64,000 bases of DNA from Podarcis muralis (lineage: Eukaryota). Every line of letters starts with the position of its first letter. The stretch's first letter is position 1. Below are positions 5,414 through 12,547 of the stretch, in pieces. The stretch lies in the NCBI RefSeq assembly GCF_964188315.1, contig NC_135655.1:78058001-78122000 (forward strand). The letters are read 5' to 3'. The notes under the pieces are model-generated. The model was not told the DNA's origin. It saw nothing but the letters and a program-made list of their open reading frames with translations, and searched no databases. A program made the translations under genes and the position numbers.

Positions 5414-5585
5414 CATCCATATCTTGGTTCCTGTGGAAAGTTTGCCATGTTCAGCAAACATCCACCCATGGTAGGAAAGCAGCATCTTTAGCGTGTAGCG
5501 CATGGAGAAAATGAGGGCCACCCAGAGCCCCGTCCCAAAAAGAATCCCACTGACAATACCTTGCGTTTGGTTGGACATATAGCCT
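5414..5585 (-). CDS. CPT1A: CPT1A coding exon 4 (172 bp), includes second transmembrane helix
   Basis: (T)[57 protein letters not shown]; aacAG acceptor, GTaaga donor; phase 2 matches exon 3. Confidence 0.96.
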
Positions 5586-6259: not shown

Positions 6260-6518
6260 CCGTATTTTTTGCTCTATAAGACTCACTTTTTCCCTCCTAA
6301 AAAGTAAGGGGAAATGTGTGTGCGTCTTATGGAGCGAATGCAGGCTGCGCAGCTATCCCAGAAGCCAGAACAGCAAGAGGGATTGCTGCTTTCACTGTGC
6401 AGCGATCCCTCTTGCTGTTCTGGCTTCTGAGATTCAGAATATTTTTTTTCTTGTTTTCCTCCTCCAAAAATTAGGTGCGTCTTGTGGTCTGGTGCATCTT
6501 ATAGAGCGAAAAATATGG
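6260..6518. mobile_element. Tc1/mariner-superfamily MITE (CCGTA-terminal, Tc2-like), 259 bp
   Basis: TA|CCGTATTTTTTGCTCTATAAGA...TCTTATAGAGCGAAAAATATGG|TA; internal 30-bp-stem hairpin. Confidence 0.85.
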
Positions 6519-6683
6519 TAAATGTGAACTGGATCACATTTTTTCCTCATTCCTAGTGCCAAGAAATGAAATTTCTCAGAGCTCTTTGTGAGTTCTTAAT
6601 GCACACGCACACATAGAGAGAGCTATATTGTGGTCCACAGACCCAGAATAGCTTGGTGCACCGTGTACTTGTCTCTGCATAAG

Positions 6684-7324
6684 TGTGATGGCCTGGGATT
6701 CCGATTCGGAGGATGAAACAGAGGAATCCCAGCCTGCACAGGAGTCCCCGCCTCCAGGGCCGGCTGAACTGGGGCAAGGCCTAGATGCTGAAGAGCCTGC
6801 ACCTGTGGCAGTGCATCAGGAGCTGGCCCCAGGTGAAGCCCTTCTGGCCCCAGAGAGGCTTGACGACTCAGTGGCCACAGGTGAGCCTCCTCCAGGGCCC
6901 AGTAACCCTTCGGCCTCTCCTGATCTGCAGAGGCTTAGAGCAGAGAGGCGAAGGGAACTGGTTGCCCCCAGGAGGAGTGCTCGCCTTAAGGCCAGAGGAG
7001 GCGGGGCTCCTGGGGGCTGGGACCGCCCATGGCCTTAGAAGAGGATAAAAGCCCAGTCAGCCCGGCCCCAGGTTGCGGGAGCAACGTCGTTGTTGGCTTC
7101 GGACCTTCCTGTGTTCCTGATCCCTGCTCGGTCTCCTGTTCCTGACTATCCGGTACTCCTGTTCCCTGCTCGGCTTCCTGTTCCCGACCATCCGGTGTTC
7201 CTGTTCCCTGCACAGCCTCCTGTTCCAGCGTTCCTGTTCCCCGCCCGGCTCTCTGCCTCGGACCTCACCCCTCTTCGTGTGGACTCTGCTACACCCAAGG
7301 TACCTTACCCCCGGGACCAGCACA
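6684..7324 (+). repeat. 5' LTR (641 bp)
   Basis: Starts TGTGATGG, ends CCAGCACA (7/8 terminal inverted match); reads identical to 11689-12329; TATA-like GATAAAA at 7044-7050. Confidence 0.97.
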
Positions 7325-7326
7325 GT

Positions 7327-7336
7327 TTGCTCCCGC
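7327..7336 (+). other. Self-priming primer-binding site (TTGCTCCCGC)
   Basis: Exact reverse complement of LTR 7075-7084 (GCGGGAGCAA), which lies 31 nt downstream of the start of the TATA-like box. Confidence 0.75.
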
Positions 7337-7387
7337 CACACCCGCACTCCCCCTTCGTAGGGGTGCGTTCGGGAAGAGCCAGAGGCC

Positions 7388-10300
7388 ATGGCTGACCAGG
7401 CGGCTGCACTGGTGGCTTTGGCCCAGGAGAACCAGGCCTTGACTCACACCGTGCAGCAGCTCAGTGACGCGGTTGTGGCACTTCAGCAACGCTTGGAAGC
7501 CCTACCGGCTCCTGGGGCCGACGCCCCGGCTCCGGGCAAGTACCCAGTGGCTTTGCCTGAGAAATTTGATGGAGCCCCGGCCAGCTTTCCCATGTTCCTG
7601 GCCCAGGCCAAGCTGTATATTCAGGGGCGAGCCCGGAACTTTCCTGACGACCGCACCAAGGTGCACTTTTTGATTAGTTTGTTAAAGGACCAGGCGGCCA
7701 AGTGGGCGTTGCCGCTACTCAGGCAAGACTCCCCCTTGCTGGCAGACTATACGGGGTTTTGCAATCGTTTGGAGGCCGCGTTCGGCAACCCCCAGAAAGG
7801 GAGTCAAGCCAACCGGGCGATTCGGCGTTTGAAACAAGGCAAGTCCACGGTGGCCGCATATACCACGGAGTTTCGGCTGTTGGCACAGGACTTGACCTGG
7901 AATGACTCGGCACTGCGGGACCAGTATCTCGAAGGGCTTTCGGACGAGGTACTGGACCAGTTGGCCACAATGGAACGTCCCACCACGCTGGACACTCTCA
8001 TTCAACGGAGTCTACAAATAGACGACCGGTTGGAGGATCGTCGTCAGGCCCGGGGTCGCCGACACTTCCAGTTCACGGCACCAGCTTTTTCCAGCAGCCC
8101 CACGGTCACGACTGATTTAACGGAGGAGCCTATGCAGCTGGGGGCAGTGCGGCCACGCCTTTCCCCCGCAGAGAAGGCGCGGCGTCGGGAGGGAAATCTC
8201 TGTCTTTACTGTGGCGGAAGTGGACACTTCGCTCGGTTCTGCCCTGAGAAACCGCCAACCCCAGTAGCTGATGGCCCTAGCTACCGGGGGTCCCAAACCG
8301 CACAGAATGGGCCCGCACCAATGGACTTGCAACATCTTATGGTTTCGGTACGTTTATACCCTCCAGGTGGGCCCTGGATCCTCACCCATGCTTTGGTAGA
8401 TTCAGGAGCAACCCGCTCCTATATGGACGCTGCTTTTGCCGCCCATCATCAGGTGCCACTTCGGAACAAGCCAGTACCGGTCCAGGTGGAAGCGATTGAC
8501 GGTCGACTTCTGCGTTCAGGTGCCGTTACTCAGGAGACCCAGCCCCTGGTCCTGTGTCTCCAGCAGCACCGGGAGTTGCGAACTTTGGACATTGCCTCTA
8601 TGCCCCGCTTCCCCCTGGTGCTCGGGATGGACTGGCTGGAAGCCCACAACGTTCAGATTGACTGGGTCAAACGGACCGTGCACTTCCCAGACCCATGTTC
8701 CCATGCTCAATCCGGAACGCTGGCGGCCGCGCCCTCAGAGGAGGCAGCACCCACGCTCCCAGCCGTGTACCAGGACTACCAGGACGTGTTCGAGGAACGG
8801 GGGGCAGACCAGCTGCCGCCGCATCGGCCTTTTGACTGCGGCATAGACCTCCAACCCGGAGCGCCTTTACCAGTGAGTCGCTTATATTCTCTAACAGAGC
8901 CAGAGCGCGAGGCTTTGCAGGACTTCTTGCGCAAGAACCTGGAGCGTGGGTTCATTAGGCCTTCCACCTCGCCTACCGCGGCACCAGTGCTTTTCGTTAA
9001 GAAGAAATGTGGGGAACTCCGCCCTTGCCATGATTACCGAGCCCTGAACAAAATTACCGTCCCAGACCGGTACCCCTTGCCCCTTATCTCGGAGCTGCTG
9101 GAGCGGGTGCAAGGGGCACAGGTGTTCACCAAGCTGGACCTCCGGGGGGCCTACAACTTGATTCGGATCCGAGCCGGGGATGAGTGGAAGACAGCGTTTG
9201 GGACCCGGTACGGGCAGTTCGAATATTTGGTTATGCCTTTCGGTTTGTGCAACGCGCCTGCTGTGTTCCAACGCTACATCAACCACGTGTTTCAGGACTT
9301 GTTAGACAAGTACGTGGTGGTGTATTTGGATGACATACTGATTTACTCCCGTGACCCGGCTCGCCATGAGGGACATGTCCGGACCGTGCTGCAGCGCTTG
9401 CGTGAGCACCGTTTGTACGCAAAGCTCAGCAAGTGCGAGTTCCATCAGCGGTCTGTGGACTTCCTTGGTCACCGGCTCTCTCCAGATGGGGTGCAAATGG
9501 ACCCGGGGAAGGTGACAGCGGTTCGAGAATGGGCGGCACCCCGGAACCGCAAGGACCTACAGCGTTTCCTGGGGTTCGCCAATTACTACCGGACCTTCAT
9601 CGCTGATTATGCTCATCGCACCACCCCGTTGACCCGGCTACTGCGCCCAAAGACGCCGTTTTCCTGGGACAAGGAGGCAGAGGAGGCGTTTCAGGGGTTG
9701 AAGGCCTGTTTCCAGAGGGCACCAATCTTACAACATCCTGACCCCTCTCGACCCTTTGTGGTGGAGACCGACGCCTCCAGTACGGCTCTCGGTGCCGTCT
9801 TGTCTCAACAGATTGGTCCTGAAGCGCCACTCTTACCCTGTGCCTTCTATTCCCGCCAGCTCCTACCAGCGGAGCGTAACTATACTGTGTGGGAGCGGGA
9901 ACTACTGGCCATCAAGGTAGCCTTTGAGGTCTGGCGCCACCATCTTGAGGGGGCACGACATCCGGTGGAGGTGAGAACCGACCACCGGAACCTGGAGTAC
10001 CTCCAGACCACCCGCAAGCTGAACCAAAGACAGATCCGGTGGGCGTTGTTCTTTTCCCGGTTCCAGTTCCGGATCCGCTACATCCCTAGCTCTCAGAATC
10101 AGAAGGCGGATGCCCTGTCCCGGAAACCTGAAGACAACGCAGACACGGTACAGCAAGCAGAACCCACCACGATCCTACCTCCGGCTGCATTCCTGGCCAC
10201 CCAGGAGGCGCAGCCACTGCAGGTTCGGGTGCGGGAACAGCAGCGGGTCGACGCTTGGGCCCAGGAACGACTCCGGGAGCTGGCTGAAGGGTCCAGCCCA

Positions 10301-12043
10301 CAGTATCCAGGGCTGGTCCTGCATCAGGGCCTTCTGCTGCACCACGGTCGTCTGTACATCCCGCCAGGGCCACTACGGCTGGAGGTTCTCCGGATGGCCC
10401 ATGATGCCCCAGCAGCGGGGCACTTTGGACGGTATCGGACCACCCATCTGGTCAGTCGTGAGTTTTGGTGGCCCCGCCTGAAGGCTGACGTGGCTCGCTA
10501 CGTTGCTGGTTGTGATGTCTGCCGGCGCGCCAAGGGACCTACCGGGCGACCCCCCGGCCTACTTCAGCCATTGCCAGTTCCACCGCGCCCTTGGCACACG
10601 GTTTCGTTGGACTTTGTAGTGGACTTACCCTCGTCTCGTGGCTGTACCTGCCTTCTGGTTTTCTCCGACCATTTCACCAAGATGGTGCACTGCGCTCCCT
10701 GTCCATCTGTACCCACAGCCAAGGAAACTGCTCAGCTGTACCTTCAGCATGTCTTCCGCCTGCATGGCCTACCTGAGCGCGTGGTGTCCGACCGGGGCGT
10801 TCAGTTCACATCCCGGTTCTGGCGAGCATTACACCAGACCCTCGGGACAGAGGTCTGCCTCTCGTCAGCCTACCACCCACAAACCGATGGCCAGACGGAA
10901 CGGGCGAACGCGGTGCTGGAGCAGTACCTCCGGTGTTACTGCAGCTACCAGCAGGATGACTGGGTCGACCACCTGGCATTGGCGGAGTTCGCCTATAACA
11001 ACGCGGTGAATGCGTCCACCCAGCAGACCCCGTTCCAGGCCAGTTATGGTTATCATCCACGGCTGTTTCCAGAGGTGCTGCCGGCATCCGCGGTCCCGGC
11101 GGTGACGGAGTGGCTTCAAGAGCTCCAGTCCCAGCAACAGCTTTTGGTGGAGCAACTGCACCAGGCCAAGGAAGCGTACAAAGCCCAGGCCGACCGCCAC
11201 CGCCAGGTGGGGCCGGAACTTCGCGTCGGTGACCTGGTTTGGCTCTCCACTCGCCACCTCCACCCCTCTCGACCTTCGCGGAAGTTGGACGCCCGCTTCA
11301 CCGGCCCGTTCCCTATCGTAGACCAAGTCTCTCCTGTGGCATTCCGTCTCCGGTTACCCGCAACCCTGAAGGTTCACCCGGTCTTCCACAGGTCCCTTTT
11401 GAGTCCGGTGGCCCCACCTGACGAGTTCCACCCGAACCGTCCCCGACCGCAGCCAGTGTTGGTTCGGGGAGAGCCTGAGTACGAGGTGGAACGCATCCTG
11501 GACTCCCGATACCGCAGGGGAAAGCTGCAGTATCTCATTGACTGGAAGGGGTACGGACCGGAGGACCGTTCCTGGGAACCAGCGGCCAACATCCACGCAC
11601 CTGCCTGCCTCCGAGAGTTCCATGCGACGTACCCCAGCAAGCCGGGTCCGGACCCTCGGTTGAGGGGGGGGCCTGGGAGGGGGGATGGTGTGATGGCCTG
11701 GGATTCCGATTCGGAGGATGAAACAGAGGAATCCCAGCCTGCACAGGAGTCCCCGCCTCCAGGGCCGGCTGAACTGGGGCAAGGCCTAGATGCTGAAGAG
11801 CCTGCACCTGTGGCAGTGCATCAGGAGCTGGCCCCAGGTGAAGCCCTTCTGGCCCCAGAGAGGCTTGACGACTCAGTGGCCACAGGTGAGCCTCCTCCAG
11901 GGCCCAGTAACCCTTCGGCCTCTCCTGATCTGCAGAGGCTTAGAGCAGAGAGGCGAAGGGAACTGGTTGCCCCCAGGAGGAGTGCTCGCCTTAAGGCCAG
12001 AGGAGGCGGGGCTCCTGGGGGCTGGGACCGCCCATGGCCTTAG
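7388..12043 (+). CDS. Single-ORF Gag-Pol polyprotein (1551 aa): PEG10/RTL-like capsid, CCHC knuckle, aspartic protease, RT, RNase H, integrase, chromodomain, U3-encoded tail
   Basis: LPEKFDG capsid motif; CLYCGGSGHFARFC; ALVDSGAT; MPFGLCNAP...YLDD; VVETDAS; HDAPAAGH...CDVC zinc finger; DFVVDLP/SDRG/TERAN core; GPF motif; EYEVERILDSR..YLIDWKGY..SWEP chromodomain; GCCATGG start is the first ATG after the LTR promoter. Confidence 0.97.
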   Translation: MADQAAALVALAQENQALTHTVQQLSDAVVALQQRLEALPAPGADAPAPGKYPVALPEKFDGAPASFPMFLAQAKLYIQGRARNFPDDRTKVHFLISLLKDQAAKWALPLLRQDSPLLADYTGFCNRLEAAFGNPQKGSQANRAIRRLKQGKSTVAAYTTEFRLLAQDLTWNDSALRDQYLEGLSDEVLDQLATMERPTTLDTLIQRSLQIDDRLEDRRQARGRRHFQFTAPAFSSSPTVTTDLTEEPMQLGAVRPRLSPAEKARRREGNLCLYCGGSGHFARFCPEKPPTPVADGPSYRGSQTAQNGPAPMDLQHLMVSVRLYPPGGPWILTHALVDSGATRSYMDAAFAAHHQVPLRNKPVPVQVEAIDGRLLRSGAVTQETQPLVLCLQQHRELRTLDIASMPRFPLVLGMDWLEAHNVQIDWVKRTVHFPDPCSHAQSGTLAAAPSEEAAPTLPAVYQDYQDVFEERGADQLPPHRPFDCGIDLQPGAPLPVSRLYSLTEPEREALQDFLRKNLERGFIRPSTSPTAAPVLFVKKKCGELRPCHDYRALNKITVPDRYPLPLISELLERVQGAQVFTKLDLRGAYNLIRIRAGDEWKTAFGTRYGQFEYLVMPFGLCNAPAVFQRYINHVFQDLLDKYVVVYLDDILIYSRDPARHEGHVRTVLQRLREHRLYAKLSKCEFHQRSVDFLGHRLSPDGVQMDPGKVTAVREWAAPRNRKDLQRFLGFANYYRTFIADYAHRTTPLTRLLRPKTPFSWDKEAEEAFQGLKACFQRAPILQHPDPSRPFVVETDASSTALGAVLSQQIGPEAPLLPCAFYSRQLLPAERNYTVWERELLAIKVAFEVWRHHLEGARHPVEVRTDHRNLEYLQTTRKLNQRQIRWALFFSRFQFRIRYIPSSQNQKADALSRKPEDNADTVQQAEPTTILPPAAFLATQEAQPLQVRVREQQRVDAWAQERLRELAEGSSPQYPGLVLHQGLLLHHGRLYIPPGPLRLEVLRMAHDAPAAGHFGRYRTTHLVSREFWWPRLKADVARYVAGCDVCRRAKGPTGRPPGLLQPLPVPPRPWHTVSLDFVVDLPSSRGCTCLLVFSDHFTKMVHCAPCPSVPTAKETAQLYLQHVFRLHGLPERVVSDRGVQFTSRFWRALHQTLGTEVCLSSAYHPQTDGQTERANAVLEQYLRCYCSYQQDDWVDHLALAEFAYNNAVNASTQQTPFQASYGYHPRLFPEVLPASAVPAVTEWLQELQSQQQLLVEQLHQAKEAYKAQADRHRQVGPELRVGDLVWLSTRHLHPSRPSRKLDARFTGPFPIVDQVSPVAFRLRLPATLKVHPVFHRSLLSPVAPPDEFHPNRPRPQPVLVRGEPEYEVERILDSRYRRGKLQYLIDWKGYGPEDRSWEPAANIHAPACLREFHATYPSKPGPDPRLRGGPGRGDGVMAWDSDSEDETEESQPAQESPPPGPAELGQGLDAEEPAPVAVHQELAPGEALLAPERLDDSVATGEPPPGPSNPSASPDLQRLRAERRRELVAPRRSARLKARGGGAPGGWDRPWP

Positions 12044-12329
12044 AAGAGGATAAAAGCCCAGTCAGCCCGGCCCCAGGTTGCGGGAGCAACGTCGTTGTTG
12101 GCTTCGGACCTTCCTGTGTTCCTGATCCCTGCTCGGTCTCCTGTTCCTGACTATCCGGTACTCCTGTTCCCTGCTCGGCTTCCTGTTCCCGACCATCCGG
12201 TGTTCCTGTTCCCTGCACAGCCTCCTGTTCCAGCGTTCCTGTTCCCCGCCCGGCTCTCTGCCTCGGACCTCACCCCTCTTCGTGTGGACTCTGCTACACC
12301 CAAGGTACCTTACCCCCGGGACCAGCACA
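11689..12329 (+). repeat. 3' LTR (641 bp)
   Basis: Direct repeat of 6684-7324, immediately preceded by the polypurine tract. Confidence 0.97.
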
Positions 12330-12547
12330 GTAAGGATATAAAGACACTTAACTCTTCTCACCCCCCAACACTGTTGATAGAGCAGCAACTGCAAGGTAAG
12401 CATATAAAGGGGGGGGGACACACGATAGGATTCTACTCTGTCATTATTATCTCACTGTACTCTTGAGCCAAACTGAGAAGTGACGTACTACCCATCATTA
12501 ACACTAACCAGAAAAATCTATTCAATGCAAAGAGAGAGTTTACTTAC

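What the first reader, a model, noticed from the sequence alone, without database searches (positions are those of the whole stretch)
7044..7336. tRNA-independent self-priming: the PBS pairs with the element's own predicted 5' end
Seen: two nt after the 5' LTR, TTGCTCCCGC (7327-7336) is the exact reverse complement of GCGGGAGCAA (7075-7084), which starts 31 nt after the start of a TATA-like GATAAAA, where transcription would be expected to begin. No TGG-type tRNA PBS is present. Known: fission-yeast Tf1 primes with its own first 11 nt after RNase H cleavage, and the same has been proposed for the vertebrate Sushi group. Inference: this intact lizard copy is a tractable vertebrate example of self-priming.
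Basis: partly seen in the sequence, partly recalled or inferred. Interest (0 to 1): 0.7.

Follow-up and report, generated by a model that had tools for sequence, protein, structure and literature searches.

The report
Self-priming signal in lizard Sushi-type retrotransposon
A young, intact jumping gene of a wall lizard most likely starts copying its RNA into DNA with the first ten letters of its own RNA instead of a host tRNA, as already known for its yeast relative Tf1 and predicted for its vertebrate relatives, so it is a well-supported but ordinary new example.

Summary
Two bases after the 5' LTR (6684-7324), 7327-7336 is the exact reverse complement of 7075-7084, which starts 31 nt after the only TATA-like motif of the LTR (7044-7050). 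No TGG occurs before 7389. A match of 10 nt or more anywhere in the LTR arises by chance in about 0.4% of controls.

The element is an intact chromovirus: identical LTRs and one 1551-aa gag-pol ORF, with a gag like PEG10 and a pol like Ty3. It nests in a vertebrate clade inside a fungal and vertebrate group.

In 17 related metagenome elements with usable LTR ends, 13 show the same layout: TATA, about 30-34 nt, primer, 74-361 nt, CA, often GT, then the PBS. Ten or more different primer/PBS sequences are involved, which is clade-level covariation.

Tf1-type self-priming is therefore the best reading (about 0.8). It is not shown directly. RNA reads gave no pile of starts at 7075, the R/U5 border and poly(A) signal are unknown, host tRNAs could not be screened, and folding favours the duplex only in a short context.

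Self-priming is published for the Tf1/Sushi group from fungi to vertebrates. This scan noted it before on other DNA of this genome (s1-152560 and others). Verdict: new member of a known kind.

The parts
6684..7324 (+). 5' LTR (641 bp, TG..CA), identical to the 3' LTR
7044..7050 (+). GATAAAA, the only TATA-like motif of the LTR. It is the predicted TATA box, and also the only AATAAA-like hexamer.
   Evidence: Relatives have TATAAG or TATAAA 30-34 nt before their primer.
7075..7084 (+). Predicted self-primer, the first 10 nt of the transcript (start of R). The RNase H cut is predicted after 7084.
   Evidence: Exact complement of 7327-7336. T/G at 7074/7075 fits a pyrimidine-purine start site. 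The start site was not observed.
7115..7226 (+). CU-rich tandem repeat (42-nt unit, 2.7 copies) in the predicted R/U5 leader. It is variable between copies.
   Evidence: (joint 7175 to 7134)
7325..7326 (+). GT dinucleotide between the LTR's terminal CA and the PBS
   Evidence: The same CA-GT-PBS layout occurs in L013, L016, L029 and L080.
7327..7336 (+). Primer binding site for the element's own 5' end
7388..12043 (+). Single intact gag-pol ORF (1551 aa: gag, protease, RT, RNase H, integrase, SH3, chromodomain). It runs 355 nt into the 3' LTR.
11675..11688 (+). Polypurine tract directly before the 3' LTR
11689..12329 (+). 3' LTR. It holds the second copy of the TATA-like motif (12049-12055) and of the primer sequence (12080-12089).

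Best explanation
This is the minus-strand priming signal of a Tf1/Sushi-type LTR retrotransposon. Steps marked inferred are not shown here.

1. Transcription starts in the 5' LTR about 31 nt after the TATA-like GATAAAA, at or next to G7075 (inferred).
2. The first 10 nt of the RNA (7075-7084) fold back over about 250 nt of R-U5 leader and pair with the PBS at 7327-7336. The complementarity is shown; the pairing in the cell is inferred.
3. The element's RNase H cuts the RNA after nt 10 (inferred from Tf1).
4. The freed 3' end primes minus-strand DNA through U5 and R.
5. Because plus-strand synthesis copies the primer back into the PBS, primer and PBS stay complementary in every new copy.

No host tRNA is needed.
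For: - The exact 10-bp complement sits 2 nt after the LTR, with about 0.4% chance of such a match anywhere in the LTR.
- It starts 31 nt after the only TATA-like motif.
- No TGG occurs before 7389.
- The element is a chromovirus with a single gag-pol ORF. Its gag resembles PEG10, which is Sushi-ichi-derived, and its pol resembles Ty3.
- In the tree it sits in a vertebrate clade nested among fungal elements. Four loci that carry the signature (L006, L058, L013, L035) bracket that clade.
- Among two-LTR relatives plus the window, an exact complement of 9 nt or more occurs in 8 of 22, against 11 of 462 cross-paired controls.
- After the LTR ends were corrected and decayed copies allowed, 13 of 17 evaluable loci show the signature, with 10 or more different primer sequences.
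- In L013, L016, L029, L035, L048, L080 and L026 a TATAAG or TATAAA box starts 30-34 nt before the primer.
- The CA-GT-PBS layout and a primer-to-PBS spacing of 215-361 nt match the window's 252 nt.
- LTR variants in the same species keep 7048/7054-7090/7093 while the neighbouring sequence differs. No variant letters were reported in 7075-7084.
- Literature: in Tf1 the first 11 nt pair with the PBS and RNase H cuts between nt 11 and 12 (PMC7175516). The mechanism is attributed to the Tf1/Sushi group from fungi to vertebrates (PMC4600332, PMC6317226).
Against: - RNA reads did not show molecules beginning at 7075. LTR coverage came mostly from diverged copies, included U3, and partly ran in from other flanks.
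- The LTR has no AATAAA-like signal after 7075, so the R/U5 border needed for strand transfer is undefined.
- The duplex has a pair probability of about 0.99 in the 271-nt leader but about 0 once the RNA extends to 7400 or beyond. There the 5' end pairs with CU-rich repeats and the PBS pairs with 7370-7381.
- The duplex is 10 bp, not Tf1's 11.
- The comparative support comes from distant relatives (39-52% identity), mostly fungal-like, and not from vertebrate sister families.
- Host tRNAs and tRNA fragments were not screened.
Confidence: 0.8

Rival explanations
1. The 10-nt complement is a chance match. Reverse transcription is primed by something else, such as an internal tRNA fragment or another small RNA that pairs with 7325-7345.
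For: A match of 10 nt or more arises by chance in about 0.4% of controls, which is not negligible over a whole-genome scan. Half-tRNA priming is noted for copia elements of this same genome (unchecked notes). Host tRNAs could not be screened, and the window has no tRNA gene.
Against: The match falls exactly where the family layout predicts, 31 nt after the single TATA-like motif. Thirteen of 17 relatives show the same layout with other sequences. No TGG is present, and the region has no Rfam match.
Confidence: 0.08
2. GATAAAA at 7044 is the poly(A) signal rather than the TATA box. RNA would end near 7065-7085, ahead of the GT-rich stretch 7086-7102. The complement of the PBS would then lie at the end of R rather than at the RNA's 5' end, and priming would differ from Tf1.
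For: GATAAA is the only AATAAA-like hexamer in the LTR, and a GT-rich stretch follows at the usual distance. No other poly(A) signal is present, unlike the zebrafish Sushi LTR logo (PMC3601003).
Against: Relatives have canonical TATAAG or TATAAA boxes 30-34 nt before the primer's first base, the spacing of a TATA box to a start site. In Tf1 the primer is the mapped 5' end (PMC7175516). U3 is almost wholly coding and offers no other promoter motif. RNA coverage did not stop near 7085, although those reads came from other copies.
Confidence: 0.06
3. The pairing is real but serves another purpose, such as closing the leader for packaging, dimerisation or control of gag translation, while priming uses another primer.
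For: Long-range 5' leader pairings serve such roles in retroviruses (general knowledge). The leader also holds a 10-nt palindrome at 7297-7306 and a stem-loop just after the PBS.
Against: The second arm sits exactly at the PBS position, 2 nt after the LTR. No other PBS candidate exists. The experimentally tested relative uses this pairing for priming (PMC7175516).
Confidence: 0.04

Closest known systems
Tf1 / Tf2 of Schizosaccharomyces pombe (self-primed reverse transcription; Levin 1995-1998, summarised in PMC7175516)
   Same: The PBS next to the 5' LTR is complementary to the predicted first bases of the element's own RNA. There is no tRNA PBS. Both have a single gag-pol ORF and an integrase with a chromodomain. 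The mechanism inferred here is the one shown for Tf1.
   Different: The duplex is 10 bp rather than 11. The leader between primer and PBS is about 250 nt and carries CU-rich tandem repeats. The host is a vertebrate. The ORF runs through almost all of U3. Nothing has been tested experimentally. Tf1 itself was not in my tree.
Vertebrate Tf1/Sushi group (sushi-ichi of Fugu and relatives; Butler et al. 2001 J Mol Evol 52:260, cited in PMC6317226 and PMC4600332)
   Same: Both are vertebrate chromoviruses whose gag is related to the Sushi-ichi-derived PEG10/RTL genes. Self-priming was proposed for them from the same kind of LTR/PBS complementarity.
   Different: This is a lacertid lizard family with identical LTRs, so a very young copy. 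Its LTR lacks the AATAAA seen near the 3' end of zebrafish Sushi LTRs (PMC3601003). I could not read Butler et al. directly, because the paper is not held.
Tj1 of S. japonicus and the Tcn1-like clade of fungi and plants (PMC4600332, PMC6317226)
   Same: Self-priming was inferred from a PBS complementary to an LTR site at the RNA 5' end.
   Different: Tj1 has a gag stop codon and targets RNA polymerase III genes. These elements are only distant relatives.

Membership tests
[quoted passage not shown] | A PBS directly after the 5' LTR that is complementary to a sequence inside the LTR of the same element | tested here: met
   7327-7336 against 7075-7084, exact over 10 nt, with about 0.4% chance
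[quoted passage not shown] | The complementary sequence is the very 5' end of the transcript (the start site is the first primer base) | tested here: inconclusive
   It lies 31 nt after the only TATA-like motif and fits a pyrimidine-purine start. Relatives show 30-34 nt. RNA reads show no pile of starts.
[quoted passage not shown] | No PBS for a tRNA 3' end (TGG...) | tested here: met
   The first TGG after the LTR is at 7389
[quoted passage not shown] | RNase H cleavage of the RNA duplex at the end of the primer | not testable with these tools
   Needs biochemistry. An RNase H domain is present.
[quoted passage not shown] | Extra leader structure (U5-IR-like stem) that supports the primer/PBS duplex | tested here: inconclusive
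   The duplex dominates the fold of 7075-7345 but disappears in longer RNAs. A stem-loop follows the PBS. The defining papers could not be read.
[quoted passage not shown] | Pol phylogeny places the element in the fungal and vertebrate chromovirus clade, and gag is of Sushi type | tested here: met
   Quick tree: vertebrate clade 97*, inside a fungal and vertebrate clade 100*, with signature-bearing loci on the backbone. DUF4939 and PEG10-like gag, chromodomain. Tf1 and sushi-ichi themselves were not available as sequences.
[quoted passage not shown] | Primer and PBS co-vary between families | tested here: met
   Ten or more different primer/PBS pairs in relatives, with 2-4 Watson-Crick pair types at each of 8 duplex positions. 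This was seen only in distant relatives, not in lizard sister families.
tRNA-primed Ty3/gypsy elements (such as Ty3) | A PBS complementary to the 3' end of a host tRNA | tested here: not met
   No TGG next to the LTR. Internal tRNA fragments were not screened.

The most novel reading that the evidence does not exclude
The LTR has a single A-rich motif, GATAAAA, and no AATAAA-like signal after the predicted start site. The same hexamer might act as the TATA box in DNA and as the poly(A) signal in the 3' LTR RNA. Alternatively, RNAs might end only at or beyond the LTR end, making nearly all of R-U5 the terminal redundancy. In addition, the CU-rich 42-nt repeats of the leader offer 13 PBS-like sites that can pair 7-9 bp (with G:U) with the primer. 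These might tune or misdirect self-priming and so generate the LTR length variants seen among copies.
Probability: 0.12. Interest if true: 0.45.

Novelty: new member of a known kind. Interest (0 to 1): 0.28.

Why it matters
To my knowledge, self-priming has been shown experimentally only in fission-yeast elements, and in vertebrates it rests on sequence inference. A very young, intact lizard copy with a clean signature gives a defined place to map the RNA 5' end and look for the predicted cDNA intermediate in a vertebrate. It also explains why annotation pipelines that look for tRNA PBSs will not find one in this family. It does not change what is known about the mechanism.

Tried and rejected
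- **RNA evidence for the start site.** Two bulk RNA runs, one single-cell run and one contig run were laid on 6484-11688. The internal part had low sense-strand depth (about 1-3). The LTR had higher depth, but from diverged copies with fixed differences at 7018, 7029, 7132 and 7267. That coverage included U3 and came partly from transcripts running in from other flanks. No pile of starts or ends was reported, so neither the start site nor the poly(A) site is resolved.
- **The look-up of encoding contigs.** DNA around the gecko, amphisbaenian, frog and fish relatives could not be fetched, and covariation in vertebrate sister families could not be tested.
- **Folding.** The overall leader fold is no more stable than shuffles (z = 0.54), and the primer/PBS duplex is lost in longer contexts. 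Thermodynamics is not used as support.
- **Closest metagenome relatives.** L001-L005, L007, L079 and L087 (about 50% identity) had no clean LTR pair or had ambiguous LTR ends. Only candidate pairs were seen, and they are not counted. The L005 repeat is a duplicated coding part, not an LTR. L044 shows no convincing complement.
- **Other searches.** Rfam found nothing relevant and ARAGORN found no tRNA in the window. The bacterial promoter and terminator scan is not applicable.
- **Papers.** The primary Tf1 papers and Butler et al. 2001 are not held. Nothing specific to Podarcis was found.

Full report
**1. The observation.**
The two LTRs are identical over 6683-7326 and 11688-12331. With the usual TG..CA ends the LTR is 6684-7324 and 11689-12329, 641 bp.
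- After the terminal CA come GT (7325-7326) and then TTGCTCCCGC (7327-7336). This is the exact reverse complement of GCGGGAGCAA at 7075-7084.
- The duplex is exactly 10 bp, because the bases on either side cannot pair.
- GATAAAA begins at 7044, so 7075 is 31 nt after its first base. It is the only TATA-like or AATAAA-like hexamer in the LTR.
- The first TGG after the LTR is at 7389, so there is no PBS for a tRNA 3' end.
- A complement of 10 nt or more anywhere in the LTR occurred in 22 of 5000 shuffles and 38 of about 8900 control positions, about 0.4% each.
- With the position constraint the chance is roughly 1e-4, a post hoc estimate of mine.

**2. What the element is.**
- One ORF, 7388-12043, encodes 1551 aa with gag (DUF4939, Retrotrans_gag, Ty3 capsid), protease, RT, RNase H, integrase, a Tf2-1-like SH3 domain and a chromodomain.
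- The ORF runs 355 nt into the 3' LTR and stops 5 nt before the TATA-like motif.
- A polypurine tract (11675-11688) abuts the 3' LTR.
- Among solved structures, pol is closest to Ty3. Gag residues 132-222 match the PEG10 capsid at E = 3e-17. PEG10 is a Sushi-ichi-derived gene (PMC10570562).
- The best protein hit is 100% identical and comes from Podarcis muralis. The next hits are gecko, anole, tuatara, frog and fish elements at 50-64%, then fungal and green-algal chromoviruses.
- In a quick maximum-likelihood tree the window sits with the gecko protein (98*). That pair lies inside a vertebrate clade (97*), which is nested among fungal elements. Plant and algal elements lie outside (100*).
- No other copy is in the window.
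- The target-site duplication reads either TAAG (4 bp, if the LTR ends CAG) or ATAAG/GTAAG (5 bp with one mismatch).

**3. Relatives.**
I used 80 metagenome and 9 IMG/VR loci instead. These encode relatives with 39-52% identity in RT-integrase.
- Thirty-three loci had direct repeats, and 21 of those looked like true LTR pairs.
- For these 21 plus the window, an exact complement of 9 nt or more between the first bases after the 5' LTR and the LTR occurred in 8 of 22. In cross-paired controls it occurred in 11 of 462. For 10 nt or more the figures are 7 of 22 against 7 of 462.
- I then corrected LTR ends by eye and allowed up to 2 mismatches in decayed copies. Thirteen of 17 evaluable loci then show the signature: L006, L013, L016, L026, L029, L035, L039, L040, L048, L058, L059, L061 and L080.
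- L047, L063 and L065 have 8 nt plus a bulged extension. L044 shows nothing convincing.
- The primers differ between families: ten or more sequences, with 2-4 Watson-Crick pair types at each of eight duplex positions. The complementarity has therefore been kept through sequence change.
- In L013, L016, L029, L035, L048, L080 and L026 a TATAAG or TATAAA box starts 30-34 nt before the primer's first base.
- L013, L016, L029 and L080 share the CA-GT-PBS layout. Their primer-to-PBS distance is 215-244 nt or so, against 252 nt in the window.
- The four signature loci with intact ORFs (L006, L058, L013, L035) lie along the backbone of the clade that holds the vertebrate group. The trait is thus probably ancestral to it.

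**4. RNA evidence.**
No listed run that holds the stretch is on record as RNA. I laid two bulk RNA runs, one single-cell run and one contig run of the same species label on 6484-11688.
- Reads lie almost entirely in the orientation expected for sense RNA. Depth is about 1-3 over the internal part and 10-19 over 6832-7353.
- The LTR reads carry fixed differences (7018, 7029, 7132, 7267), cover U3 as well, and some enter the LTR from other flanks. They come largely from other insertions.
- No place where many molecules begin or end was reported. The start site and the poly(A) site remain unmapped.
- LTR variants in this species keep 7048/7054 to 7090/7093 while the sequence on either side differs. 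No variant letters were listed in 7075-7084. This is weak support for constraint on the promoter-to-primer core.

**5. Mechanism.**
The best reading is the Tf1 mechanism. [quoted passage not shown] The mechanism is attributed to LTR retrotransposons from fungi to vertebrates (PMC4600332), specifically the Tf1/Sushi group (PMC6317226, citing Butler et al. 2001). Here the primer would be 7075-7084 and the cut would fall after 7084.
- Shown: the complementarity, its position, the family placement and the clade-wide pattern.
- Inferred: the start site, the fold-back in the particle, the RNase H cut, and strand transfer.

**6. Weak points.**
- Folding supports the duplex only in the 271-nt leader (pair probability about 0.99). 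Once the RNA runs to 7400 or further, the 5' end prefers the CU-rich repeats and the PBS prefers 7370-7381. A chaperone or extra structure would be needed, as in Tf1.
- No AATAAA-like signal follows 7075. GATAAA followed by a GT-rich stretch (7086-7102) also looks like a poly(A) site. I give that rival low odds, because relatives show TATA-to-start spacing and because self-priming needs R to extend past the primer.
- Host tRNAs and their fragments were not screened.

**7. Novelty.**
The mechanism and its presence in vertebrate Sushi-type elements are published. This scan has noted the same signature on other DNA of this genome many times. One follow-up (s1-152560) reached the same verdict. No paper on this lizard family was found. 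It is a new member of a known kind, useful mainly as a young, intact, well-defined vertebrate example.

Noticed in passing
window 7115-7226: CU-rich tandem repeat (42-nt unit, 2.7 copies) in the predicted leader. RNA reads show copies with one more unit (joint 7175 to 7134). Other LTR variants replace 7091-7223 with unrelated short sequence.
   Followed up: partly
window 7103-7243: Thirteen sites in the CU-rich leader can pair 7-9 bp (G:U allowed) with the predicted 10-nt primer. The repeat motif TGTTCCC differs from the PBS core TGCTCCC by one base. These could compete with the true PBS, or the matches may only reflect low complexity.
   Followed up: partly
window 7044-7102 and 12049-12107: GATAAA is the only AATAAA-like hexamer in the LTR and is followed about 40 nt later by a GT-rich stretch. 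No poly(A) signal lies after the predicted start site, unlike published Sushi LTR logos.
   Followed up: partly
window 7297-7306 and about 7341-7368: A perfect 10-nt palindrome (AAGGTACCTT) lies in the predicted U5, and a GC-rich stem-loop lies directly after the PBS. They are candidates for dimerisation, packaging or priming-support structures.
   Followed up: no
window 11689-12043: The gag-pol ORF continues through the polypurine tract and 355 nt of U3. It ends 5 nt before the TATA-like motif, so almost all of U3 is coding.
   Followed up: partly
window 6484-6657: The left flank of the element is a very high-copy repeat (word depth about 1400 in a contig run). It is transcribed on both strands, with many different continuations.
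   Followed up: no
window 6679-6683 and 12330-12334: The target-site duplication is ambiguous. It is either TAAG (4 bp, if the LTR ends CAG) or ATAAG/GTAAG (5 bp with one mismatch), despite identical LTRs.
   Followed up: partly
L059 and L005: L059 holds nested or rearranged copies: a PBS at 5456 and a 5' LTR interrupted after 691. L005 has a duplicated coding segment rather than LTRs.
   Followed up: no
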